In this document: in pieces, positions 1,189 through 62,303 of the stretch | Layout of the letters: each line of letters opens with the position of its first letter | Position numbering within the stretch: position 1 is the first letter of the stretch | Assembly: GCF_006345805.1 (NCBI RefSeq) | Contig: NC_042998.1 | Span: forward strand, 20,150,001-20,214,000 | Reading direction: 5' to 3' | Source: Octopus sinensis | Lineage: Eukaryota | DNA: 64,000 nt | Program-made: the position numbers and the translations under genes | The notes under the pieces: model-generated | Databases searched by the model: none | What the model was told of the DNA's origin: nothing | What the model saw: only the letters and a program-made list of their open reading frames with translations

Positions 1189-3475
1189 AACTTAGAATAA
1201 CTTAGAAAGGTTTGGGCCAGTATTGGCCCAGGCCATGTCTAACTTAATAGCACCACCTGGTGAAGTCTTTCAGTTCATGATTTGGGCACCAAGGCCCATT
1301 CGAGCAGAGAGTTATTGTTTGCGGAGACATATCCGGGTGTGGGTGGTTTGTCCGGTACTGTTTGAAGGAATTTGTCCAAAAACTTCTTGAATTTTGTGTG
1401 GTCAGTTTCTTTTTTGACGTGCCCTGGTGTAATGTTGAAGAGAGCAGGTCCAATTGAGGTGAAATAGTTGTGCCGTATTGTCGTTATGTGATGCGATTAG
1501 ATAGATTTTGTTGTGGACGGATGGCACGTGGTCCAAGCCTTGGATGCATTTTGAAGGTGATGCCAACATCATTCGGACAGTGCTGGTGGAATATTTTCCA
1601 CATCATACAGATAATGTAGCGTTCACGGCGTCGTTGGAGTGAATACAATTTCAGCTTCTCTAGTCTACCCCAGTAGTCAAGGTCTGACATGCCATCTATC
1701 TTTTTTGTGATTGACCTTTGGGGAGCTTCAATTCTCATAATATTTTGTTTTGTGTAGGGAGACCACAGTGGACAGCAGTATTCAAGGTGGGGTCGGGCAA
1801 AAGTGGAGAAGAGAAGGATAATAGCGTGGGAAACTCTCGACTGGAAGGTTCTGAGAATCCAGGAACACATTCTGCGGGCCATGTCAACTTTGCTGCTTAT
1901 ATGTGTAGCCCAGCTTATGTTGCTGTCCACTGTTACTCCCAGGTCTCTGATGTTGTTGGATGCCATGAGAATTTCTCCAGAAGGAAGAGAGTATGGGAGT
2001 TTCAGAGCGTCCTCCCTTCCAAAGTGGATCAGTTCAAATTTGTCTTCATTTAGCAACATGTTATTCTTTTCCGCCCATTGGACAACAGCCAGTAGGTCTG
2101 ACTGAAGGTTTATTCGGTCATCCACGCCATTGATGACCTTCTGGAGCTTGGAGTCATCAGCGAAGGTTCTGATGTTACTGTGTTTGATGGTATCAGTAAT
2201 ATCATTTATGTAGATGATGAAGAGAAGTGGGCCCAACACAGTGCCTTGTGGGACACCACTGCTGACTTTGGCTGGGCTGGATTTGACTCCTTCGACTACA
2301 ACATGTTGGGTTCTGTTAGACAGGAATCACTTGATCCACTGCAGCAACTTTCCAGTGACACCAATATTGGACAGCTTTCTCAGAAGGATCTTATGATCAA
2401 CCCTGTCAAAGGCCTTGCTGAAATCAAGGTAGATGACATCAGTGTTGGAACCTTCTCCCAAGGCTCTCAAAATGTCATCAAAATGATGCAGTAGCTGCGT
2501 CAGGCAATCTCTCCCATTACGGAATCCATGCTGGTTGGGGTTCAGCATATTATGCCTCTCAAGGAAGTGAGTCATACGCGATCTCAGCACCCTCTCAAAT
2601 ACCTTGATGATATGAGAGGTGAGTGAGATTGGACGGTAATTCACGGCAAGCGATTTGTTTCCTTTTTTGAAAACTGGGACAACAGACTGGGATAGAAGGT
2701 CCTCTGGTATATATCCAGCATCCAGTGAGTTCCGCCACAGATTGGCTAGAGGGGGTGCGAGTTGGTTTTGACACATCTTCAAGACACAAGCAGGGACCTA
2801 TCGGGACCTACTGCTGAATTATGCTTCATTTCCTTTATTGCTGCTAAGACATCAGGAGCGCCAAATGTTATGTCCGATAAAGTGTATTGGGGAGTAACAT
2901 CACTGATACAGCCCAGATCAGTCATACAGGAGTGATTGTGAAAACAGAGCAATATTGTTTCTGCAATATCTCTCCCATGGTTTTGGCATTGTCTTGAAGA
3001 GTACCATTTTCATCAATCAGAGGGCCAACAGTAGAACCAGTGACTCTGTGTTTTTTTGCAAATGAAAAGAACACTTTGGGATTGAGTTTGATCTTCTCAA
3101 TGGCCCAGGCCTCTTCAGCTCTTCGCTGACTATTGATGATAGACATCATGTTGTTTTGGAGTTTATGTTTTTAATCTCTAGCGACGAGATGGCAGTCAGG
3201 TTGGTGTGTTGCTGTTGACAGTATTTCAGCATGCTGATCTTTTTGTTGATTCTTTTAATTTTCCTTATGAGAGATTTTCTATTTCTAGGGATTCGACACT
3301 TAGATTTGTTTGCAGATCTTAATGGGGTGTGTCTTGCACATATGTTCGTGATGATGTCTACAAGTGACTGCCAGGACTTTTTAATGTTAGTGGGTGTGTA
3401 TGTGTGCGTGAAGGACCAATCAACTTGTGCAAGATCATTATTGATCGCTTCCCAGTTTGCATTGTGGAAATCCAT
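1189..3475 (-). mobile_element. 5'-truncated CR1/L2-group non-LTR retrotransposon
   Basis: RT motifs VIYLDFSKAFDRVDH, PQGTVLGPLLF and FADD. The 3' UTR ends in a hairpin TGGGCCA-gtat-TGGCCCA (1213-1230) and a tandem TTCTAAGTTA tail. Frameshifts occur upstream of 2782. Confidence 0.9.
1484..2782 (-). pseudogene. reverse transcriptase pseudo-ORF of the CR1/L2-group LINE
   Basis: ORFs 2327-2782 and 1484-2239 are in one frame, joined through a single TGA (QWIK*FLSNRTQHVVVEGVKSSPAKVSSGVPQGTVLGPL). Confidence 0.9.
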
Positions 3476-7679: not shown

Positions 7680-8110
7680 TCTACTATATACGAAATAGGC
7701 AGAGAGTCGATTTCATTTTACCCGAGTACTCACCTAGTACATCTTTTATCGACCCCTGAAAAGATGAAAAGCAGAGTTGACGTCGGTGGGATTTGAACTC
7801 AAATCGTAAAGCCGGATAAAAGCCACTAAGCATTTTGCACGGTGCGATGACAACAATTCCGCTAGCTCGCTGCTAGAACATCACCTTAATAATGGTATCT
7901 ACTATAGACACAAGGACTAAAATTTGTGGTGTGGAGTCTAATCGATTACATTGAACCCAGTGCTCAACTGGTGCTTATTTCATCGACCCCCCCAAAAGGG
8001 TGAAAGGTACAGCTGATGTCGGCGGAATTTGAACTGAGATTGTAAAGCTGGAGAAATGTCGCTAAGCATTTTGCACGGCACAGTAAATAATCAGCCAGCT
8101 CACCGCCTGA
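7680..8110 (-). mobile_element. two adjacent decayed family-A-head SINEs (tail type B)
   Basis: Reverse complements of GAGTTCAAAT (B box), GGGGTCGAT and TAAGTACCAG modules occur twice. Confidence 0.7.
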
Positions 8111-15810: not shown

Positions 15811-16043
15811 TATTTCTTTACTACCCACAAGGGGCTAAACATAGAGGGAACAAACAAGGACAGTCAAAGAGATTAAGTCGATTATATCGACCCCAGTGCA
15901 TAACTGGTACTTAATTTACCGACCCCGAAATGATGAAAGACAAAGTCGACCTCGGCGGAATTTGAACCCAGAACACCTGACAGCAGACGAAATACGGCTA
16001 CGCATTTCGCCCGACCTGCTAACGATTATGCCAGCTCGCCGCC
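15811..16043 (-). mobile_element. tRNA-derived SINE family A (monomer)
   Basis: Full head GGCGGCGAGCTGGCA through to the AAAGAAATA end; 17-bp TSD CCGGATATGAATGCATA (15794-15810 / 16042-16058). Confidence 0.9.
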
Positions 16044-16349: not shown

Positions 16350-16790
16350 TTATAGCAACCAGCTAGCTTGATATAACTGTCTTGTATTGTTTATAGTCGG
16401 CTTCTGTTGGCGTATTAATATGGCTTCGGAGATTTCAAGGTTGCCTCTGTTGCGCTGTGTTGCTCTGATGTGCACTGTGAACTCTCGGATGTGGCATCTA
16501 CGTGAATGTTTCTTGTCTGAAGTGTCAGTCTGCATGTGGTCTTTTATGCGTATGTGAAGTTTTCTTGTTATGCTTCCTATGTAGTATGCACTACATTTGC
16601 CGAAACTGACCTCGTATACAATATAGGTCCTCTGGTCCATTTTGCGATCATTGATGAAGCAATTTGATAATTTGCACCCCTCGTTGTTGTGAAAGGTGTT
16701 GTTCGTGTTCAGAACGTTTCTAAAGGGTGGACTGGTGTGTATTATCAGTATGTGGAGTCCCTCCTTGCGGACTGCATGTCCTATCGTAAC
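16350..16790 (-). pseudogene. GIY-YIG endonuclease of the Penelope-like element
   Basis: IVYEV..KCSAYYIGSITRKLHIRIKDH...LEISEAILIRQQKPTINN. The N-terminus in the ORF track is SINE-derived. Confidence 0.85.
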
Positions 16791-16799
16791 AGTAATTCT

Positions 16800-17400
16800 A
16801 ATTTTTTTATTGCCTACAAAGGGATAAACATAGAGGGGACAAACAAGGACAGACAAACGGATTAAGTCGATTATATTGACCCCTCGTACGTAACTGGTAC
16901 TTATTTAATCGACGCCGAAAGATGAAAAGCAATGTCGACCTCGGCAGAATTTGAACTCAGAACATAACAGCAGAAGAAATACCTATTTCTTTACTGCCTA
17001 CAAGGGGCTAAATATAGAAGGGACAAACAAGGACAGACAAACGGATTAAGTCGATTATATCGACCTCAGTGCGTAACTGGTAGTTAATTTATCGACCCCG
17101 AAAGAAAGAAAAGCAAAGTTGACCTCGGCGGAATTTGAACTCAGAACATAAAGACAGACGAAATACCTATTTCTTTACTGCCCACAAGGGGTTAAAACAC
17201 AGAGAGGACAAACAAGGATAGACAAACGGATTAAGTCGATTATATCGACCCCAGTGCGTTGCTGGTACTTATTTAATCGACCCCGAAAAAATGAAAAGCA
17301 AAGTCGACCTCGACGGAATTTGAACTCAGAACGTAACGGCAGATGAAATACCACTAGGTATTTCATCCGGCGTGCTAACATTTCTGCCAGTTCGCCGCCT
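16800..17400 (-). mobile_element. SINE family A trimer (one headed unit plus two headless units)
   Basis: Junctions GAAATACC|TATTTC at 16983 and 17167 (period 184). Candidate TSD TAACAGTAATTCT / TAGCAGTAGTTCT. Confidence 0.9.
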
Positions 17401-18058
17401 TAGCAGTAGTTCTGTCATCAGAATGCGGTAGCTTTAGGAAGCGCATGCCGGACGTGGGAGTATGAGGCGTTCTTCCGGGATTTATTGCACCTGATGTTCT
17501 TTAGGTGCTGTTGTTTGGCTAAAGGTGGTGGCTAGCCATTCAGAGTTAGGTCTCTGAGGGACTGCTTGGTGTTTGGTGATTTTGTCGGTCACCTTGTTGC
17601 ATTTGTTGCTTATTCATGCAATCTCGTTTCTCCCGTATGCGGCTTTGGCTCTGGTGGTTAGGACTGATTGGTAGTGGACTAAAGGTTTTCTACTAGTAGA
17701 AGTTAGTAAATATGGAGCCTTCCTCTGTGATCCTGAGTTGAAAGTCGAGCAGAGAGAGAGAGAGGTTTCCGGACTCGCCTGGATGTTCAATTTTGTTCAG
17801 AATTTTTGTATATCTCGATGTTATTGAAGGTCCGGTGTATGTTAATGGCGTCATCTCTGGATGTAACATACTTGCTTAGTCTTTTTTACAAAAAATCTGC
17901 AGCGGTTTTTGAAATCTGAGAGATGACATAAGCTATTAGCAATTGTTAATACATTTGTAGTTCTCCCTTCCGTTATATAATCATTTCCGTGTTTGTAATT
18001 TGCATGAATATTTATAAATGTATTCCTATGTGTATATGTACGTATATGTATAAGTTTA

Positions 18059-20340: not shown

Positions 20341-20383
<43 letters not shown>

Positions 20384-20420
20384 GTAGGTAGGTAGGTAGG
20401 TAGGTAGGTAGGTAGGTAGG

Positions 20421-20483
<63 letters not shown>

Positions 20484-20550
20484 GTAGGTAGGTAGGTAGG
20501 TAGGTAGGTAGTAGGTAGGTAGGTAGGTTGGTAGGTAGGTAGGTAGGTAA

Positions 20551-20956
20551 GGCGGCGAGCTGGCAGAATCGTTAGCACGCCGGACGGAATGCTTAGCGGT
20601 ATTTCGTCTGCCGTTACGTTGTGAGTTCAAATTCCGCCGAGGTCGACTTTGCCTTTCATCCTTTCGGGGTCGATAAATTAAGTACCAGTTACGCACTGGA
20701 GTCGATGTAATCGACTTAATACCTATGTCTGTCCTTGTTTGTCCCCTCTGTGTTTGGCCCCTTGTGGGTAATAAAGAAATAGGTATTTCGTTTGATGCTA
20801 CGTTCTGAGTTCAAATTCCGTTGAGGTCGACTTTGCCTTTCATCCTTTCGGGGTCGATTACATATGTACCAGTTACGCACTGCGGTCGATCTAATCTCTT
20901 TGTCTCTCCTTGTTTGTCCCGTCTATGTTTAGCCCCTTGTGGACAATAAAGAAATA
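20551..20956 (+). mobile_element. SINE family A dimer
   Basis: Headed unit plus headless unit; junction AAAGAAATA|GGTATTTCG near 20781. Confidence 0.9.
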
Positions 20957-24945: not shown

Positions 24946-25176
24946 AGGCGGCGATCTGGCAGAAACATTAGCACACCGGGCGAAATGCGTAGCCGTATTT
25001 CGTCTGCCGTTACGTTCCGACTTCAAATACCGCCGAGGCCGACTTTGCCTTTCATCCTTTCGGGGTCGATAAATTAAGTACCAGTTACGCACTGGAGTCG
25101 ATGTAATCGACTTATTCCCTTTGTCTGTCCTTGTTTGTCCCCTCTGTGTTTAACCCCTGGTGGGTAGTAAAGAAAT
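24946..25176 (+). mobile_element. SINE family A monomer
   Basis: Full head and AAAGAAATA end, flanked by duplicated ATATATATATATACATTAC. Confidence 0.9.
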
Positions 25177-25437
25177 ATATATATATACATTACTAACATG
25201 GAAAGTAATGCGCTTACATTCTTATTTCACCCACAGCAAGGCTTTCAAATATTCAAACTTACTTCATTTCTTCCGTCGTACGTTGTGTTGTGCAATATAT
25301 ATATATATATATATATATATGCGTGTGCGTCTGTGTGTGTTCGCGCGCGCGTGTGTGTGATGTGTGTATAATTAAATATATATATATATATATTAAAGTA
25401 ACATATATATATGTATACATACACATATACATGCATG

Positions 25438-29689: not shown

Positions 29690-30115
29690 TTTATTTATTT
29701 GTATACCCAGGCCTATTCCCCATTCGTTTAGGAGGGGTAGCCACAACAAGACACACATCAGGCATTCTATTCATTTCCCAGCTCAAAGAGGCGATCCCAG
29801 TTCTATGCTCGGGTGAAGGCATAGAAAGCAATCTCTGGTTTAGCCCCGCCGCATCATGCTGGTTCCGTACCCCTTTGTGGACGGATGAGTGAATTTGATG
29901 TTGCTCAAACACACTCCAAATTTTCCTATCATTTATAAACTCCCTTGCCTCTCTTACTCCAACATCTCTAACCCGCAAATCTTTCCTCACTCCATCCATC
30001 CACAGAAATCGAGGTCTGCCTCTGGTTCTGCTGCCTACCACTTCTGTTTTCAACACCCTCCTTACCATCCGCTTCTCATCCAACCTTTTTATGTGGCCAA
30101 ACCACCTCAACATTA
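29690..30115 (-). mobile_element. RTE-clade LINE 3' fragment
   Basis: LRWFGHIKRL...RGRPRFLWMDGVRKDL..DRKIW, with a (TAAA)n tail. Confidence 0.85.
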
Positions 30116-30644
30116 GTCTATTTTGATTGTCAGTTTTGAAAATCCGTTCAGCCGTTTTGAAGTAATTTTGCCAAAAACACAGACACACAAAGACGCGTAA
30201 TTACTACACCCTGCTTTTGGTTGTGCGCGCAGGGTAAAAAATGCTTCATTAAATAAACAACTTTCATAACCAAATAACGACCACTTCTAAATTACCTGTG
30301 GAAGAAAAAATGGAGACAACTACTACCATTCCTACAGCAACTTTTACGGTGTAGCTTTCTATCTATTACTTGATGGAAAGCTACACTGGCTTCATTACTA
30401 CTGTCAAGAATGTCAAGAACAAAAAGAGAAAGAACAGTGTTGAAATGGTGTTGTGCTAAATGAGCTCTTAATCACTCTTAATGTTTTAAAATGTATTGAT
30501 GACTAAATAACATAGTTTTTCTTTCTTAAAGACGACAGAATGTTATTTGGGGTGATTTGTGTGTTGTTTCTAGCATGTTGTGTGAGCTGGTAGAGAGTAT
30601 CTTGTTGGTGAGTTACTCGATTCTGAATTGATATAGCTATATAT

Positions 30645-30856
30645 ATTTCTTTATTACCCACAAGGGGCTAAACACAGAGGGGACAAACAAGGACAGACAT
30701 CGACCCCAGTGCGTAACTGGTACTTTATTTATCGACCCCGAAAGGATGAAAGGCAAAGTCGAACTCGGCAGAATTTGAACTCAGAACGTAGCGGCAGACG
30801 AAATACCGCTAAGCATTTCACCCGGCGCGCTAACGTTTCTGCCAGCTCGCCGTCTT
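30645..30856 (-). mobile_element. SINE family A monomer (internal deletion)
   Basis: Head and tail present; the flank TAGCTATATAT is duplicated and then tandemly amplified at 30857-30920. Confidence 0.85.
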
Positions 30857-32604: not shown

Positions 32605-32838
32605 TTTATTTCTTTATTGCCCACAGGGGGCTAAACATAGAGGGGACAAAGAAGGACAGACAAAGGGATTAAGTCGATTATATCGACTCCAGAGCGTAAC
32701 TGGTACTTATTTAATCGACCCCGAAAGGATGAAAGGCAAAGTCGACCTCGGCGGAATCTGAACTCAGAACGTAGCGGCAGGCGAAATACCGCTAAGCATT
32801 TCACCCGACGTGCTAACGTTTCTGCCAACTCGCCGCCC
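32605..32838 (-). mobile_element. SINE family A monomer
   Basis: Full length. Confidence 0.9.
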
Positions 32839-32859
32839 TCAATCATATTAGTGAGCGTA

Positions 32860-33075
32860 AGACGGTGAGCTGGCAGAATCGTCAGGACGCTGGATGAAAT
32901 GCTCAGCGCAATTCGTCCGTTCTTACGTTCTGAGTTCAAATTCTGCCGAGGTTGTATTTGACTTTTATCCTTTCGGGGTCGATAAAATAAGTACCAGTCA
33001 CGTACTGCGGTCGATGAAAAAATCACTCCTTACCCCCCGAAATATATGGCCTTGTGCCAAAATTTGAAACCGGTA
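32860..33075 (+). mobile_element. family-A-head SINE (tail type B)
   Basis: GAGCTGGCAGAATCG head, GAGTTCAAATT and the end CCAAAATTTGAAACC. Confidence 0.8.
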
Positions 33076-34267
33076 CACTGTGAGCGTGAAGCGGCCTAAC
33101 GTTTCCACTGACTTAGATCTTTTGTCTAAAAACCCAAGCAAAAATCTTCAAGGTTTCCCTCTCTCAAAGAATTACTCATTTTGCCCCACATCTTAGCTTC
33201 TTTTTTAAGCTTCTGAAAATCGCCATTTACGTTGAAAAGCAGGGTTTAATACCTCCAGTCGACTCCCTTTCTTTGTTAAATTCCTCCTACAAGGTGACAC
33301 TGTTGATACCGTCTTTCTTGATGGACCTTCTCCTTTGCCTTCGGTGGGTTCATATCTCATCAACCGCAACGTTTACAAAACTTCAAATGTTGTTACTGTT
33401 GTTTTTGTTGTTGTTGGTTGTGGTGGTACTGGTTCTGATGAAGGTGATGGTATAGTGTTGGTGGTGGACATAGTGGTGGTTCTGGCGGTGGCAATGGTGG
33501 TGATTTTGAAGGTTGTCCTGCTGCTACTGCTGGTGGTGGTAGTGGTGATGGTGGTTTGGTGGTGCAGATGACAGTTGTGATAGCGGTGGTTGTGGTAGTG
33601 GCAATGTCGGCGGTGGCGATATAGGTGGTGGTGGTGGTGGTAGCAGTGGTAGTGGTAGTGGTAATGAAAGTGATGGTCTTTTGGTGGTAGTGGAGGTGGC
33701 AGTGGTGGTGGCGGCTTTAGTGGTAGTGATAGTTATGGTGGTGGTGTTGGTGGTGTTGGTTTGGTATTGGTAATAATAGTGGTAGTGATGTTCATGGTTT
33801 GGTGGTGGTGGTGATGGTGATGTTGGTGATGGTGTAGTAATGGTGGTGTTCCTGGTGGTGGTGGTGGTCGTCGTGGTGGGGTTATTGACGGAAGTGCTGA
33901 CATTTTCGTTTCTTTCATACATATTGTACTGATTTTTTTTTACTCCATTCGAATTAATATTTCACTCACCTTTTTTGCATTTTCCATTGTAAGCGCTTTA
34001 ACTTGAATCTCGGCATATGTGTTTATGTTCTACGTTCACTACATTCTAGCCTGCCTTCGCGTTTGAAAACAATTGGAGGCGTCATGTTTTATGCTATTGG
34101 AATACGGAATATTTCTTGGTAAAATGAACCAAACCAGACACCATGTGTTTATATATTTGAACACAGCTGTTTTAAATACGGCTCTATTCTTGCAGTACAC
34201 GCTACACTTTATTGCGTCAAGTATTGTTGGAAATATCCATCTTGTTAAACTCGTACATTCACAGCCA

Positions 34268-34309
<42 letters not shown>

Positions 34310-34310
<1 letters not shown>

Positions 34311-34764
34311 TGGGATATGCCGATACACACAGATAGAGAAATTAAGGTCAACAGACCAGATATAGTTGTCAGAGATCATGAAGAAAAAAAATGCTTTCTA
34401 ATTGATGTATCAATACCGGCAGATGACAACGTGTCTCTAAAAGAAATGGAGAAACTCTCAAAATACAAAGACCTGGAAATAGAGGTAACTAGAATGTGGA
34501 ACCTGAAAACAGAAACAATTCCTATCATAGTAGGTGCATTAGGCATGATAAAAAAATATTCAGACAAATACATAACAAAAACACCAGGACTTACAAACAC
34601 ATATAACATACAGAAAATTGCACTACTAGGCACTGCACACATCCTACGCAGAACACTTTCCATACAATAACCATCAGAGCATCACAACAAATCACAGCAC
34701 ATACCTAAGGCACACAGAGCTGCGCTCGGTAGTGAAGTGAAAGCACGCTATAAAAATAAAACTA

Positions 34765-37616: not shown

Positions 37617-37848
37617 GGCGGCGAGCTGACAGAAACGTTAGCACGCCGGGCGAAATGTGTAGCCGTATTTCGTCTGCCGCTACGTTATGAGTTCAAATTC
37701 CGCCGAGGTCGACTTTGCCTTTCATCCTTTCGGGGTCGATTAAATAAGTACCAGTTACGCACTTGGGTTGATGTAATTGACTTAATCCCTTTGTCTGTCC
37801 TTGTTTGTCCCCTCTATGTTTAGCCCCCTGTGGGCAATAAAGAAATAG
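37617..37848 (+). mobile_element. SINE family A monomer
   Basis: Full length; TSD ATATGCATACA (37605-37615 / 37851-37861). Confidence 0.9.
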
Positions 37849-40186: not shown

Positions 40187-40483
40187 CATTATTATTGGAA
40201 GAAGAAGAAGAAGAAGAAGAAGAGGACAAGGAGGAGGAGGAGGAGGAGGAGGAGGAAGAGGAGGAGGAGGACAAGAATATGAAAATGAAATTTCGTCTTA
40301 AAAAGAACGCAGGATATTCTCGGTCATATTTTGAATTTTTGCATTTCAACGTTCTTTTGATTTTTCATTTTGAAACCCAGGAAGAGAGCCACAATGTTGA
40401 AATATGGTTCAATTCCAAAAACAGTATCAGTTTCCATGTATTACAGATAATATCGCGCTCTTCTTATTGCCCGTGTGTTTAAG

Positions 40484-40808
40484 GCGGCGAGTTGGCAGAA
40501 ACGTTAGCACGCCGGGCGAAATGCGTAGCCGTATTTCGTCTGCCGTTACGTTCTGAGTTCAAATTCCGCCGAGGTCGACTTTGCCTTTCATCCTTTCGGA
40601 CTCGATCAATTAAGTACCAATTACGCACTGGAGTCGATGTAGTCGACTTAATCCGTTTGTCTGTCCTTGTTTGTCCCCTCTGTGTGTAGCCACTTGTGGG
40701 TAGTAAAGAAATAGGTATTTCGTCTGCCGCTACGTTCTGAGTTCAAATTCCCCCGTGGTCGATTTTGCCTTTCATCCTTTCGGGGTCGATAAATAAGTAC
40801 CAGAGACT
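40484..40808 (+). mobile_element. SINE family A dimer (second unit truncated)
   Basis: Junction AAAGAAATA|GGTATTTCGTC near 40713. Confidence 0.9.
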
Positions 40809-45399: not shown

Positions 45400-45978
45400 T
45401 ATTCCTTTCTACTAAACGCACAAGGCTTGAAATTTGAGGGGCGGTAGCTAGTCGATTGCATTGTCCCCAGTGCTCAACTGGTACTTATTTCATCGACCCT
45501 GAAAGGATGAAAATCAAAGTTGACTTATGCCGAATTTGAACTCAGAACGTAAATACGATCAAAATACCTATTTCTTTATTACCCACAAGGGGCTAAATAC
45601 AGAGGGAACAAACAAGGACAGACATAGGTATTAAGTCGATTACATCGACCCCAGTGCGTAACTGGTACTTAATTTATCGACCGAAATGATGAAGGCAAAG
45701 TCGACCTCGGCGAATTTGAACTCACAACGTAATGCAGACGAAATACCTATTTCTTTATTACCCACAAGGGGCTAAACACAGAGGGGACAAACAAGGACAG
45801 ACATAGGTATTAAGTCGATTACATCGACCCCAGTGCGTAACTGGTACTTAATTTATCGACCCCGAAAGGATGAAAGGCAAAGTCGACCTCGGCGGAATTT
45901 GAACTCACAACGTAATGACAGACGAAATACCGCTAAGCATTTCGCCCGGCGTGCTAACGATTCTGCCGGCTTGCCACT
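45400..45978 (-). mobile_element. SINE family A trimer ending in a tail-B unit
   Basis: Junctions AAATACC|TATTTC at 45568 and 45747. The 3'-most unit carries a different tail (..CCCCTCAAATTTCAAGCCTTGTG..). Confidence 0.88.
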
Positions 45979-47526: not shown

Positions 47527-47973
47527 GGATCTTTTCGGTTTGAACGGCAGTTTTTTTTTCTAGCGGTGTCATATGAAATTGTCACCCATAATTATGACCC
47601 TAGTATCGATCTATTGCATTTCAATCTGTTTTTGGGTTAGAGTTAGTTAGGGTTAGTTAGGGTTAGGATTAGGGGTGGAGGGAAAGGTATATTTTTTTCT
47701 TCAGAAATGTAAATAAACCCAATCTGTTTCTTAAACGAGGGGCATATTCATACGGCACAGAATGTTTTCACCTCAGTAGACGTCATTGATTGGTTGAAAT
47801 TGCAGAAATTGAAGAAAAAACAATAACAAATATCTTACAAACTATAGAATTTTCTCAATAAAGCCAAGAGAAAAAGATGTTTTATAAACACATTATACCA
47901 GTATACGAAGTTTAAAAGTGTTTAGTTACGTAGAAATTATTTTTAAAAACTGCCGTTCAAACCGAAAAGATCC
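47527..47973. mobile_element. MITE with 29-bp perfect TIRs
   Basis: GGATCTTTTCGGTTTGAACGGCAGTTTTT at both ends, AATAA on both flanks, and internal GGGTTA-like repeats. Confidence 0.9.
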
Positions 47974-48569: not shown

Positions 48570-48892
48570 AATTTTTGGCCCGGGGACAGCAAATTGGGGG
48601 AAGGTGTAGGTCGATTGTATCGACCCCAGTACTTAACTGATACTACTGATACTTAATTTATCGACCCCGAAAGGATGAAAGGTAAAGTCGACCACAGCGG
48701 AATCTGTACTCAGAATGTAAAGACAGACGAAATGCAAATAGACATTTAGCCCGGCATGCAAAAGATTCTGCCAGCTCGCTGCCTTCAGAGGTAAAGTCGA
48801 CAGCGACAGCATTTGAACTCAGAACGTAAAGTCGGAAGAAATGCCGCGAAGCATTTGCCCGATACGGTAACGATTCTGCCAGCACGCTGCCA
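48570..48892 (-). mobile_element. family-A-head SINE (tail B) plus an adjacent head fragment
   Basis: TCGACCCCGAAAGGATGAAAGG module and two head sequences. Confidence 0.7.
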
Positions 48893-49735: not shown

Positions 49736-49809
49736 TGATAAAGTATTAAAGTAATAAGAATCCGATGGGAACGAAACAAAAGTGTATACGATGTTAAAAA
49801 ACTGAAGCA

Positions 49810-50422
49810 GAATATTATTTTTCTACTCTAGGAACAAGGTCCGAAATATTGGGGGAAGGCGACAGTCGATTAGATTGACCCCAGTACGCAACAGGTACTT
49901 AATGTATCGACCCCGAAAAGATGAAAGGCAAAGTCGACATCGGTGTAATTTGAACGAAGAATGTCAAGACAGATCAAATACTGCTAAGCATTTCGCTCGG
50001 CGGGTTAACGTCTCGTATTTTTTCACTGCTCTCAAGGGGCTACACAGAGAGGGGACAAACAAGGACAGACAAAGGGATTAAGTTGATTACATCGACTCCA
50101 GTGTGTAACTGCTACTTAATTTATCAACCCCGAAAGCATGAAAGGCAACGTCGACCTCGGTGGAATTTGAACTCAAAACGTAAAGACAGATGAAATACCT
50201 ATTTATTTACTACCCACAAGGGGCCAAACACAGAGAGGACAGAGAAACGGATTAAGCCGATTATATCGACCCCAGTGCGTAACTGGTACGTATTTAATCG
50301 ACCCCGAAAGGATAAAAGGCAAAGTCGACCTCGGCGGATTTTGAACTCAGAATGTAACGGCAGACGAAATACCGCTAAGCATTTCGCCCGGCGTACTAAC
50401 GATTCTGCCAGCTCGCCGCCTT
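49810..50422 (-). mobile_element. SINE family A dimer joined to a tail-B SINE
   Basis: Canonical junction at 50199; a different junction at about 50015 into a tail-B head. Confidence 0.85.
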
Positions 50423-50804
50423 ACTGAAACAGAATATCGAAGAGGAGATGAATACAGAGAGTAAGAAATATAGAGAGGTGTTGCTTATATGGAAAGAGAG
50501 AGAGACAGAGACAAACAGACAAACAGAGAAAGAGACAGAGGAGCAAGGGAGAGGGAGAGAGAAAGAGAGAAATAGTTGGTATGAGAGGCGGTCGGAAATA
50601 CGAGTTACTTAACAGAGAGGTGTTTGATATGATACATAGGGAGAAAAAGGGGTCTGATAGTTTAGGGTGTCATAGTCGTTCCTTTTTTAAGCTGCAACTT
50701 CGGTTGCCTCGATTCCTTTACACAAAGCAACCTACATACATATATCCATATATTTACAATTAAACATAGATATATCCTTCTATATAGAGACTTAAATATA
50801 TATA

Positions 50805-62203: not shown

Positions 62204-62303
62204 NNNNNNNNNNNNNNNNNNNNNNNNNNNNNNNNNNNNNNNNNNNNNNNNNNNNNNNNNNNNNNNNNNNNNNNNNNNNNNNNNNNNNNNNNNNNNNNNN
62301 NNN
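62204..62303. other. assembly gap (100 N)
   Basis: N run. Confidence 1.

What the first reader, a model, noticed from the sequence alone, without database searches (positions are those of the whole stretch)
16800..17400. SINE concatemers with one invariant junction at a hairpin loop: candidate self-targeting or RNA-processing amplification system
Seen: family-A SINEs form arrays of one headed unit followed by headless units of about 184 bp at five separate loci (16800-17400, 20551-20956, 40484-40808, 45400-45978, 49810-50422). Seven junctions (near 16983, 17167, 20781, 40713, 45568, 45747, 50199) all join the normal SINE 3' end (..AAAGAAATA, or a decayed form) to the same internal position GGTATTT. 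In the intact head that position is the first base 3' of the TAGC loop of the hairpin GAAATGCT-TAGC-GGTATTTC. The new junction itself folds (GAAAT-AGGT-ATTTC). Inference, with four competing models: (a) new copies insert site-specifically into older copies at this loop and rejoin through the homologous head; (b) RT jumps between RNAs that were cut at the loop; (c) circular or ligated RNA intermediates; (d) read-through of one ancestral concatemeric master copy, since the consensus-like sense units show no T4 Pol III terminator. I know of no description of this for these SINEs but cannot check the literature.
Basis: partly seen in the sequence, partly recalled or inferred. Interest (0 to 1): 0.85.

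Follow-up and report, generated by a model that had tools for sequence, protein, structure and literature searches.

The report
Octopus SINE arrays joined at one hairpin base
A short mobile element in what is probably an octopus genome repeatedly forms head-to-tail chains in which the normal 3' end of one copy is always joined to the same base beside a hairpin loop of the next copy, and these joins arose several times independently, which points to an undescribed site-specific step in how such elements copy themselves.

Summary
The window, probably from an octopod, holds 10 family-A SINE loci. Five are singletons with clean 11-20 bp target-site duplications (TSDs). Five are arrays of one headed unit followed by headless units. 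All 7 junctions join the intact tail ..AAAGAAATA to G48. G48 is the first base 3' of the UAGC loop of a conserved 13-bp RNA-type hairpin.

The junction is not inherited from one ancestral dimer. In four arrays the subfamily or family changes within 8-24 alignment columns around the junction. One downstream unit belongs to another SINE family. No ribozyme or circular-RNA signature was found.

Downstream units are older-looking than upstream ones. In array A4, two nearly intact young units sit between a decayed 5' head stub and a decayed family-B unit, with no TSD.

Best reading, confidence about 0.4: units are added stepwise. Reverse transcription of a new family-A RNA starts at its normal 3' end, on a DNA 3'-OH opposite G48 of a SINE copy already at the locus. 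The 5' end is closed through the shared head.

Main rival, about 0.28: template switching within one insertion event from loop-cleaved RNA.

All evidence comes from one 64-kb window, and what cuts at G48 is unknown.

The parts
16801..17399 (-). Array A1. Headed unit u1 is 17168-17399, headless u2 is 16984-17167 and headless u3 is 16801-16983. Junctions lie at 17167/17168 and 16983/16984.
   Evidence: The three units share array-specific variants: C105T in all three and G220A in u2 and u3.
17401..17413 (-). 5' TSD of the whole A1 array, AGAACTACTGCTA. Its partner is at 16787-16799, AGAATTACTGTTA (11 of 13 match).
   Evidence: No duplication lies between the units.
17340..17369 (-). Head hairpin of A1.u1 (SINE positions 31-60). 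Position 48 is the base used at all junctions.
   Evidence: RNA -19.5 kcal/mol, z -3.2; 86% of cells are paired across 21 heads, with four G.U positions and a compensatory U.G to G-C change.
20551..20956 (+). Array A2. Headed u1 is 20551-20781 (young subfamily). Headless u2 is 20782-20956 (S4/S5-type, decayed, with a 9-bp deletion).
   Evidence: Private substitutions are 0 versus 10 (Fisher p 7e-4). A (TAGG)52 microsatellite abuts the head.
40483..40803 (+). Array A3. Headed u1 is 40483-40713 (C48/G43 hairpin type). u2 is 40714-40803, starts with G48 and is cut off at about unit position 137.
   Evidence: No TSD was found.
45400..45977 (-). Array A4. u1 is 45748-45977, young, but its first 13 bases are decayed. 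u2 is 45569-45747, young. u3 is 45400-45568, a family-B unit that starts at the same position 48.
   Evidence: Differences from consensus are 4 in positions 1-13 versus 6 in the other 218 (Fisher p 7e-4). No TSD was found.
49815..50420 (-). Array A5. u1 is 50200-50420 and u2 is 50016-50199. A family-B copy (B9, about 49816-50015) follows, joined at about its position 14. The whole compound is flanked by a 15-bp TSD: 50423-50437 ATATTCTGTTTCAGT and 49801-49815 ATATTCTGCTTCAGT.
15811..16043 (-). Singleton S1 (comparator). The other singletons are S2 24947-25177 (+), S3 30644-30853 (-), S4 32607-32837 (-) and S5 37617-37847 (+). All end at ..AAAGAAATA and all have 11-20 bp TSDs.
48575..48891 (-). 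Compound B7+B8. A head fragment (positions 1-106) is joined to a full family-C copy, and the pair is flanked by a perfect 13-bp TSD, TGTCTCAGACTAA. This looks like a one-event template-switch chimera.

Best explanation
Arrays grow stepwise toward the 5' side at loci that already hold a SINE. Each junction marks a start of reverse transcription. Copying of a family-A SINE RNA begins at its normal first template base, A231. This is the same end seen in every solitary copy, so it is set by the partner LINE enzyme rather than by Pol III termination. The primer is a DNA 3'-OH that ends opposite G48 of an existing unit. That existing unit is usually an older resident copy, of family A or of a related family with the same hairpin. 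The new cDNA then runs into its own head sequence, and the 5' side is closed by annealing to the resident head. No second head and no internal target-site duplication are left. The net result is one extra 184-bp unit: young upstream, old downstream. Once a junction exists, unequal exchange within an array can add or remove units (A1; A4 u1/u2). Shown here: the junction position, its independent recurrence, the older look of downstream units, the mosaic A4 structure, and the RNA-type hairpin. Inferred: that the primer is resident DNA, the homology-assisted closure, and the cause of the break at G48. One possible guide for that break is that the tail's last six bases, GAAAUA, are complementary to the element's only TATTTC, at positions 50-55, two bases from the junction.
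For: 1. Left side of the junction. All 15 family-A tails in the window end at ..AAATA. Of these, 8 abut another SINE unit and 7 abut a TSD or flank. The left side of the junction therefore equals the normal reverse-transcription start.

2. Independent origin. Sequence type switches within 24, 13, 8 and 16 alignment columns around the junction in A2, A3, A4 (u2|u3) and A5. The joint chance for uniformly placed switch points is about 3e-5. In A4 the downstream unit belongs to another family.

3. Age order. Terminal branch lengths are A2 0.011 then 0.080, A4 0.0015 then 0.015, A5 0.059 then 0.100, and A1 0.051, 0.053 then 0.080. The downstream unit is the longer branch in 5 of 5 adjacent pairs. 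Private substitutions in A2 are 0 versus 10 (p 7e-4). Pooled, downstream units have 39 per 995 nt and headed units 40 per 1810 nt (p 0.013).

4. A4 structure. A decayed 5' stub (4 of 13 bases changed) and a decayed family-B unit flank two units that are 97-98% identical to the youngest subfamily. No TSD is present. All five singletons, although older, have perfect or near-perfect TSDs.

5. Heads. Every array starts with a head, and no solitary headless copy exists. At position 48 the chain continues 7 of 7 times. At true 5' ends it continues about 1 time in 17.

6. Complementarity. TATTTC occurs once in the 231-bp consensus, at position 50.

7. Retargeting of SINE loci. Arrays of the form TSD1-(SINE-TSD1)n exist in the window (B1+B2) and in an Octopus sinensis contig.
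Against: 1. The site ..TTAGC|GGTAT.. does not resemble the A/T-rich nick sites of the solitary insertions (|ATAT, |AATA, |AGAA). A primer ending ..ATACC-3' also has no microhomology with the RNA tail.

2. The hairpin is an RNA-level feature. As RNA it folds at -19.5 kcal/mol. As sense DNA it folds at -7.3 kcal/mol, which is unremarkable. The antisense strand does not form it, because of four G.U pairs. This points to an event on RNA rather than on duplex DNA.

3. Exact single-base precision in at least five independent events is hard to obtain from DNA breakage.

4. The age asymmetry rests mainly on two arrays, A2 and A4. 'Private' substitutions partly reflect poor sampling of old subfamilies, and the tests were chosen after seeing the data.

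5. A1 and A5+B9 are flanked by TSDs as whole compounds, which suits a single-event origin equally well.

6. Only 64 kb could be examined.
Confidence: 0.4

Rival explanations
1. Template switching within one insertion event. SINE RNAs are cut in the anticodon-like loop between C47 and G48, as tRNAs are cut into halves. Reverse transcriptase copying such a 3' fragment runs off at G48 and jumps to the 3' end (or normal start site) of another family-A RNA. It repeats this until it copies a full-length RNA, and the whole chain is then integrated with one pair of TSDs.
For: The hairpin is a stable, conserved, RNA-type structure, and the loop is its only exposed part. TSDs flank whole compounds: A1, A5+B9 and B7+B8. 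B7+B8 can hardly be anything other than a one-event chimera. There is published precedent. U6/LINE-1 chimeras join a full-length upstream RNA at its exact 3' end to a 5'-truncated downstream RNA, and tRNA/LINE-1 chimeras have breakpoints at anticodon-loop cleavage sites (PMC13174262).
Against: Cut RNA ends should also integrate, yet no solitary headless copy and no headless-first array is seen (0 of 7). True 5' ends almost always integrate. Downstream units look older than upstream ones, so decayed genomic copies would have to supply the first template. The two youngest arrays (A4, A2) lack the clean TSD that a recent single event should leave. The decayed 5' stub of A4 is unexplained. Consensus units have no Pol III terminator, so a free RNA 3' end at A231 is not expected.
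Confidence: 0.28
2. Descent from one ancestral concatemeric master. A single duplication created the junction. Pol III reads through the terminator-less units, and dimer or trimer RNAs are retrotransposed. Unit number changes by slippage or unequal exchange.
For: This model gives an invariant junction, G at position 48 in all 7 junctions although 4 of 10 heads carry C48, arrays that always start with a head, and TSDs around whole arrays. Consensus units have no T4 run. A1 units share array-specific variants, and A4 u1 and u2 are 98% identical. Dispersed SINE-derived arrays with one unit boundary are known in squamates (PMC10702118).
Against: A2.u1 and A4.u1 are 98% identical, but their second units are only 86% identical. 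A3 pairs a C48-type head with a G48 unit. A4 ends in a family-B unit at the same junction. Type switches coincide with the junction in four arrays. A4 has no TSD and has a decayed head stub, so it is not a recent retrocopy.
Confidence: 0.1
3. Double-strand-break repair. A break near the hairpin of a resident monomer is repaired from an array elsewhere in the genome. The copied strand overshoots by one or more units before re-annealing, so the junction is copied from the donor rather than made anew.
For: This model explains exact junctions without any site-specific enzyme. It also explains old flanks around young units (A4), retention of the resident head and the absence of new TSDs.
Against: It needs the break and the right-hand conversion boundary to fall within about 10 bases of position 48 in every heterotypic array, whereas mosaic units are expected. 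As DNA the palindrome is weak. The first junction still needs another origin.
Confidence: 0.1
4. RNA-level joining or circles. The tail GAAAUA pairs with the 3' arm of a loop-cleaved SINE RNA and so mimics a nicked anticodon loop. A tRNA ligase seals A231 to G48, or unit-length circles are copied by rolling-circle reverse transcription.
For: The tail hexamer is complementary to the single TATTTC at positions 50-55, next to the junction. RNA ligation has been proposed for U6/LINE-1 chimeras.
Against: No self-cleaving ribozyme or any other Rfam family matches, even at E<=10. Units within an array are not identical copies. Nothing creates an RNA 3' end at A231. The 6-bp pairing is weak against the 13-bp native stem. 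The model shares the age and TSD problems of the template-switch model.
Confidence: 0.04

Closest known systems
SINE-derived satellites of squamate reptiles (Vassetzky et al. 2023, PMC10702118)
   Same: Both are dispersed loci of tandem units derived from part of a tRNA-type SINE. A longer terminal unit reaches the SINE terminus. The same unit boundary recurs at many loci. The units include box B.
   Different: The squamate arrays usually have 4 to about 1000 units and are more homogeneous within arrays than the SINE copies are among themselves. They are discussed as duplication followed by satellite-type amplification. Here arrays have 2-3 units and are often built from different subfamilies or families. 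The unit runs exactly to the SINE 3' end, and the other boundary lies at a hairpin loop.
Tandem-like SINE arrays in bivalves, TSD1-(SINE)n-TSD1 and TSD1-(SINE-TSD1)n (PMC11481361)
   Same: Both are mollusc tRNA-related SINEs that form short direct arrays inside one pair of TSDs. The TSD1-(SINE-TSD1)n type is also present here for other families (B1+B2 in the window; the O. sinensis contig L001).
   Different: In the bivalve (SINE)n type the repeated units are truncated at both head and tail, as expected from an internal tandem duplication. Here every unit keeps the complete tail.
U6/LINE-1, Alu/LINE-1 and tRNA-half/LINE-1 chimeric retrocopies (PMC13174262)
   Same: An upstream partner ending at its exact natural 3' end is joined to a 5'-truncated downstream partner in the same orientation. 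The chimeras are made by reverse-transcriptase template switching or RNA ligation. tRNA partners break at anticodon-loop cleavage sites.
   Different: In those chimeras the downstream (LINE-1) breakpoint varies and the events are rare. Here the breakpoint is one base in 7 of 8 cases, and half of the loci are affected. Both partners are SINEs, and the downstream partner looks older.
Homology-assisted 5' joining of LINE-1 cDNA to a resident LINE-1, giving chimeric L1 integrants (cell-culture studies, recalled from my own knowledge and not checked here)
   Same: The new cDNA is closed by annealing to a related resident element upstream, so no duplicate 5' end is left.
   Different: That process is described as an occasional by-product and shows no preferred nick site inside the resident element.

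Membership tests
tRNA-related SINE mobilised by a LINE (CORE-SINE type, as known from octopus OR1/OR2) | Internal Pol III promoter (boxes A and B) in a tRNA-like head | tested here: inconclusive
   Box-like motifs are visible by eye (GAGCTGGCAGAA; GAGTTCAAATTCC). ARAGORN finds no tRNA. The Rfam tRNA model does not match even at E<=10.
tRNA-related SINE mobilised by a LINE (CORE-SINE type, as known from octopus OR1/OR2) | Short dispersed copies with a defined 3' end and variable TSDs | tested here: met
   There are five singletons of 211-233 bp. All end at ..AAAGAAATA and all are flanked by 11-20 bp TSDs.
tRNA-related SINE mobilised by a LINE (CORE-SINE type, as known from octopus OR1/OR2) | Shared central CORE domain, with family-specific LINE-derived tails | tested here: inconclusive
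   Families A, B and C share head and centre but have three different tails. The resemblance of the centre to the CORE domain is recalled from memory only. No partner LINE 3' end with the family-A tail lies in the window.
SINE-derived satellite (sSat) | Tandem units from a SINE portion, with a longer terminal unit reaching the SINE end, at many loci with the same boundary | tested here: met
   Five loci and 7 junctions show an identical boundary.
SINE-derived satellite (sSat) | Amplified arrays (four or more units) that are homogenised within loci | tested here: not met
   Arrays have 2-3 units. A2, A3, A5 and A4 (u2|u3) are heterotypic.
One-event template-switch chimera (U6/LINE-1 type) | The whole compound is flanked by one pair of TSDs of the same age as the youngest part | tested here: inconclusive
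   This holds for A1 (11/13), A5+B9 (14/15) and B7+B8 (13/13). It does not hold for A4 or A3. A2 is ambiguous because it lies in a microsatellite.
One-event template-switch chimera (U6/LINE-1 type) | The downstream partner is truncated at variable positions | tested here: not met
   Position 48 is used in 7 of 8 tail-to-SINE junctions.
Retrozyme or other self-cleaving tandem repeat with circular RNA | A hammerhead, HDV-like, twister, hatchet or other ribozyme in each unit | tested here: not met
   No Rfam match was found at gathering score or at E<=10 on the arrays.
Dimeric or multimeric SINE family that amplifies as a unit (Alu-like) | All copies share the same unit composition and unit-specific diagnostic changes | tested here: not met
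   The same young u1 (98% identical) is paired with unrelated second units in A2 and A4.

The most novel reading that the evidence does not exclude
The family-A SINE homes to the hairpin of its own relatives. The tRNA-like anticodon-type loop of a SINE copy or of its transcript is cut at one phosphodiester bond, C47|G48. The end so exposed is used with high efficiency to start reverse transcription of another SINE RNA. This may be guided by the tail hexamer, which mimics the 5' arm of the hairpin. About half of all new units would then be added to existing SINEs rather than to new sites. That would be a site-specific, self-targeting mode of SINE growth that links tRNA-half-like processing to retrotransposition.
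Probability: 0.3. Interest if true: 0.8.

Novelty: new variant of a known kind. Interest (0 to 1): 0.6.

Why it matters
SINE arrays and SINE-derived satellites are known, but how they start is not. Here the joins can be read base by base. They use the normal reverse-transcription start on one side and a single base beside a conserved RNA hairpin loop on the other. They were made several times between unrelated copies.

If this holds genome-wide, it offers a tractable case of site-specific joining by a LINE reverse transcriptase. That joining could be nested self-targeting or template switching from loop-cleaved RNA. It would also offer a concrete route from dispersed SINEs to tandem repeats in cephalopod genomes, which are unusually SINE-rich.

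The question can be tested directly with public octopus assemblies and RNA data.

Tried and rejected
1. More copies from public collections. Exact-pattern scans with conserved SINE 22-25-mers found nothing in viral, metagenome (two scans) or prokaryote genome contigs. A protein search with the antisense SINE reading frame, designed to count headed versus junction copies, found no candidate.

2. Octopus DNA through transposon proteins. A LINE reverse-transcriptase search gave one named Octopus sinensis protein and one 20.5-kb locus, L001. A follow-up search gave nothing more. Other long contigs turned out to be ctenophore-like. Exact look-ups of two window ORFs that overlap arrays were not on record. 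L001 holds related SINEs but no family-A copy and no junction.

3. Ribozyme or tRNA models. There were no Rfam or ARAGORN hits. The only sub-threshold hits were miRNA-like matches caused by an inverted SINE pair.

4. RNA-editing footprint in downstream units. Only 1 of 39 private changes is A>G, so this was rejected.

5. Microhomology or homologous crossover between the tail GAAAT and the 5' arm GAAAT. This predicts that the loop is retained (..GAAATGCTTAGCGG..), which is not seen. Rejected from the sequence.

6. tRNA-splicing-endonuclease type cleavage. The expected sites lie near the stem base, not at the apex. Rejected by geometry (inference).

7. Head older than body as a general marker of resident heads. 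Singletons show the same excess of head changes, because the head is CpG-rich. Only the first 13 bases of A4 stand out.

8. Assembly artefact. The only N-run lies at 62204-62303, and units within arrays differ by 2-18%, so the arrays are not collapsed repeats.

9. GIY-YIG / Penelope-like reading of ORF 16350-16856. Pfam did not confirm it.

Full report
WHAT THE WINDOW IS

The window has 37% G+C and is crowded with microsatellites. It carries LINE reverse-transcriptase fragments whose best named relative is an Octopus sinensis protein. The same SINE head and centre occur in an O. sinensis contig, L001, with nhmmer E-values from 1e-34 to 1e-39. The source is therefore probably an octopod. Octopus tRNA-derived CORE-SINEs have been known since 1994 (cited in PMC4758252 and PMC4824008). 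I found no paper that describes these arrays.

CHECK OF THE OBSERVATION

The junction 19-mer occurs 7 times, against 0.03 expected. Tandem Repeats Finder reports periods of 184 and 179 bp at two arrays. A profile built from the ten headed copies finds 10 family-A loci.

- Singletons: S1 15811-16043, S2 24947-25177, S3 30644-30853, S4 32607-32837, S5 37617-37847.
- Arrays: A1 16801-17399 (3 units), A2 20551-20956 (2 units), A3 40483-40803 (2 units, the second cut short), A4 45400-45977 (3 units), A5 50016-50420 (2 units).

Every headless unit starts at model position 48, GGTATTT. Every upstream unit ends with the full tail ..AAAGAAATA. Folding places G48 as the first base of the 3' arm of a 13-bp hairpin, 31-43 paired with 48-60, with loop UAGC. 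The consensus has no T4 run.

Two points add to it. The third unit of A4 has a different tail (..AGTAGAAAGGAATATTATT), so it belongs to family B. The A5 array is followed directly by a family-B copy (B9) joined at about its position 14.

ANATOMY OF THE SINGLETONS

The singletons carry TSDs of 11-20 bp that are perfect or nearly so. These TSDs start with A/T-rich motifs (|ATAT, |AATA, |TATG) that overlap the tail's ATA. This is the ordinary pattern of target-primed reverse transcription with a few bases of microhomology.

No terminator follows the tail. The fixed 3' end must therefore be set by where the partner enzyme starts copying. This step is an inference.

Of the 15 family-A tails in the window, 7 abut G48 of another unit, 1 abuts B9, and 7 abut flanking DNA.

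THE JUNCTION IS MADE REPEATEDLY

The heads are polymorphic at the closing pair of the hairpin. Six have U43.G48 and four have the compensatory G43-C48.

- A3 has a C48-type head, but its second unit starts with G48.
- A2.u1, A4.u1 and A4.u2 are 97-98% identical and belong to a young subfamily. A2.u2 belongs to the S4/S5 subfamily and is 86-87% identical to A2.u1, A4.u1 and A4.u2.
- A4.u3 is family B.

Mapping the last and first diagnostic columns puts the type switch within 24, 13, 8 and 16 columns around the junction in A2, A3, A4 (u2|u3) and A5. The joint probability is about 3e-5 if switch points were placed uniformly along the unit. The junction is therefore the point at which different molecules were joined, at least four times. 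A single ancestral concatemer cannot be the whole story. By contrast, the A1 units share array-specific variants, and A4 u1 and u2 are near-identical. Local expansion or a common source also contributes.

WHICH UNIT IS OLDER

In a neighbour-joining tree the terminal branch of the downstream unit is the longer one in all five adjacent pairs.

| Array | Terminal branch lengths, 5' to 3' |
|---|---|
| A2 | 0.011, 0.080 |
| A4 (u1, u2) | 0.0015, 0.015 |
| A5 | 0.059, 0.100 |
| A1 | 0.051, 0.053, 0.080 |

Private substitutions in A2 are 0 versus 10 (Fisher p 7e-4). Pooled, downstream units carry 39 per 995 nt and headed units 40 per 1810 nt (p 0.013). The spectrum of changes is ordinary decay with no A>G excess, so edited RNA templates are not indicated.

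A4 is the most telling array. Two nearly intact young units lie between a head whose first 13 bases carry 4 changes and a decayed family-B unit. The other 218 positions of u1 carry 6 changes, and the nine other heads have 0 or 1 change in the first 13 bases (Fisher p 7e-4). No TSD is detectable around A4. Yet the older singletons all keep clean TSDs. This is the pattern of young material inserted into an old resident element.

These tests were chosen after seeing the data and rest on few loci.

TSDS AND OTHER COMPOUNDS

A1 as a whole is flanked by AGAACTACTGCTA / AGAATTACTGTTA. The compound A5.u1+A5.u2+B9 is flanked by ATATTCTGTTTCAGT / ATATTCTGCTTCAGT. No duplication lies between units. This fits a single event, and it equally fits additions inside a resident copy that keeps its original TSDs.

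B7+B8 consists of head positions 1-106 joined to a full family-C copy, with a perfect 13-bp TSD. It shows that one-event template-switch chimeras do occur in this genome. B1+B2 and the L001 cluster with a repeated ATTATTAATATGACATA are arrays of the TSD1-(SINE-TSD1)n type. Existing SINE loci are therefore hit again.

THE HAIRPIN

Across 21 heads of three families, 86% of cells pair, against 40-55% when the partner columns are slid. Four positions are mostly G.U, and the closing pair shows four double changes.

- As RNA the hairpin folds at -19.5 kcal/mol (z -3.2).
- As sense DNA it folds at -7.3 kcal/mol (z -0.7).
- The antisense strand does not form it.

It is therefore a feature of the transcript. 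This favours an event on RNA and counts against a purely DNA-level explanation. The tail's last six bases, GAAATA, repeat the start of the 5' arm. Their complement, TATTTC, occurs only once in the element, at positions 50-55, two bases from the junction. A random junction would lie that close roughly 3% of the time (rough estimate). Family B and C heads mostly read CATTTC at that place. The family-B unit joined at position 48 (A4.u3) reads TATTTT.

NO RIBOZYME

No Rfam family matches at gathering score over the window, or at E<=10 over the arrays. No tRNA is called.

WEIGHING THE MODELS

Each junction can be stated formally as a normal reverse-transcription start on a family-A RNA, primed by a DNA 3' end that stops opposite G48 of another unit. 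The open question is whether that DNA is a resident copy or a nascent cDNA.

*Resident copy (stepwise nested addition with closure through the shared head).* This explains the older downstream units, the A4 mosaic, the missing TSDs of the youngest arrays, the constant presence of a head and the absence of solitary headless copies. It does not explain what nicks duplex DNA at ..TTAGC|GG.., a site unlike the usual targets.

*Nascent cDNA (template switch from loop-cleaved RNA).* This fits the RNA nature of the hairpin and has published analogues: U6/LINE-1 chimeras and tRNA-half chimeras (PMC13174262). It predicts solitary headless copies, units of equal age and fresh TSDs. None of these is seen here.

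I rank the resident-copy model first at about 0.4 and the template-switch model second at about 0.28. Break repair copied from array donors and a master concatemer each get about 0.1. RNA ligation or circles get about 0.04.

COMPARISON WITH KNOWN KINDS

The nearest described kinds are three.

- SINE-derived satellites of squamates. They share one unit boundary at many loci and a longer terminal unit, but they are long and homogenised.
- Bivalve tandem-like SINE arrays. In their (SINE)n type the units are truncated at both ends.
- Chimeric retrocopies. Their downstream breakpoints vary.

The present case differs in three ways. Every unit has a complete tail. The acceptor is a single base at a hairpin loop. 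The arrays are heterotypic. I class it as a new variant of a known kind.

LIMITS

All evidence comes from one 64-kb window with five arrays, plus one 20-kb contig that has no family-A copy. No RNA data and no orthologous loci could be reached with the tools. The mechanism at G48 is inferred, not shown.

Noticed in passing
window 48575-48891 (-): Compound SINE B7+B8. A head fragment (positions 1-106) is joined directly to the 5' end of a full family-C copy. The pair is flanked by a perfect 13-bp TSD, TGTCTCAGACTAA. It looks like a one-event template-switch chimera with an internal acceptor site.
   Followed up: partly
window 49801-50437 (-): The tail of A5.u2 is joined to about position 14 of a family-B copy (B9). 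The whole three-part compound is flanked by a 15-bp TSD (14/15). This is the only tail-to-SINE junction that is not at position 48. Its site, |CAGAAAC, resembles ordinary nick sites such as |AGAAC.
   Followed up: partly
window 7693-8107 (-): Two full family-B copies, B1 and B2, lie in tandem. They are separated and flanked by three decayed copies of one short sequence: TGCTGGTGTTC, AGGTGATGTTC and TGCCTGTGTTT. This is the TSD1-(SINE-TSD1)2 arrangement, which suggests reuse of a target site or exchange between TSDs.
   Followed up: partly
L001 14290-15075 (Octopus sinensis contig VCDQ01000580.1): Three related SINEs with (ATT)n-type tails lie in tandem, each followed by ATTATTAATATGACATA, which is the same TSD1-(SINE-TSD1)n pattern. 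The third copy contains an internal partial repeat in which a truncated tail is joined to about position 55. The first copy lacks the 5' arm and loop of the hairpin.
   Followed up: partly
window 32607-33019: Singleton S4 (-) and a family-C-like copy, B5 (+), lie head to head about 25 bp apart. Together they form a long inverted repeat that gives sub-threshold miRNA-precursor matches (mir-3473, 30.8 bits against a gathering score of 71.8).
   Followed up: no
window 20341-20549: A (TAGG)52 microsatellite abuts the head of array A2. (AGAT)n lies further upstream, and (AGAT)4 lies just after the array. The array probably sits in an AGAT microsatellite whose upstream part has since been replaced or expanded.
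   Followed up: no
window 45569-45747 (-): Unit A4.u2 differs from its near-identical neighbour mainly by four single-base or two-base deletions, three of them in short homopolymer runs, all within its first 75 bases. This may reflect error-prone synthesis or errors in the assembly.
   Followed up: no
window 1484-2782 (-): Two adjacent ORFs carry reverse-transcriptase domain fragments (RVT_1). The best named relative is Octopus sinensis LOC115227543 (64% identity), with ctenophore LINE-like proteins at about 50-55%. ORFs at 29691-30188 (-) and 34212-34670 (+) look by eye like C-terminal parts of retrotransposon proteins but have no Pfam match.
   Followed up: partly
window 16350-16856 (-): A 168-aa ORF runs from the tail of A1.u3 into the flank. 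It contains a motif that looked to me like a GIY-YIG nuclease (..YYIGSITRKLHIRIKDH..). Pfam gives no such hit, only a sub-threshold STN1_2 match, so this reading is unverified.
   Followed up: partly
window 47636-47666 and 62204-62303: A short interstitial telomere-like repeat, (TTAGGG)-type, period 10, 3.1 copies, lies at the first site. The assembly gap of 100 N lies at the second.
   Followed up: no
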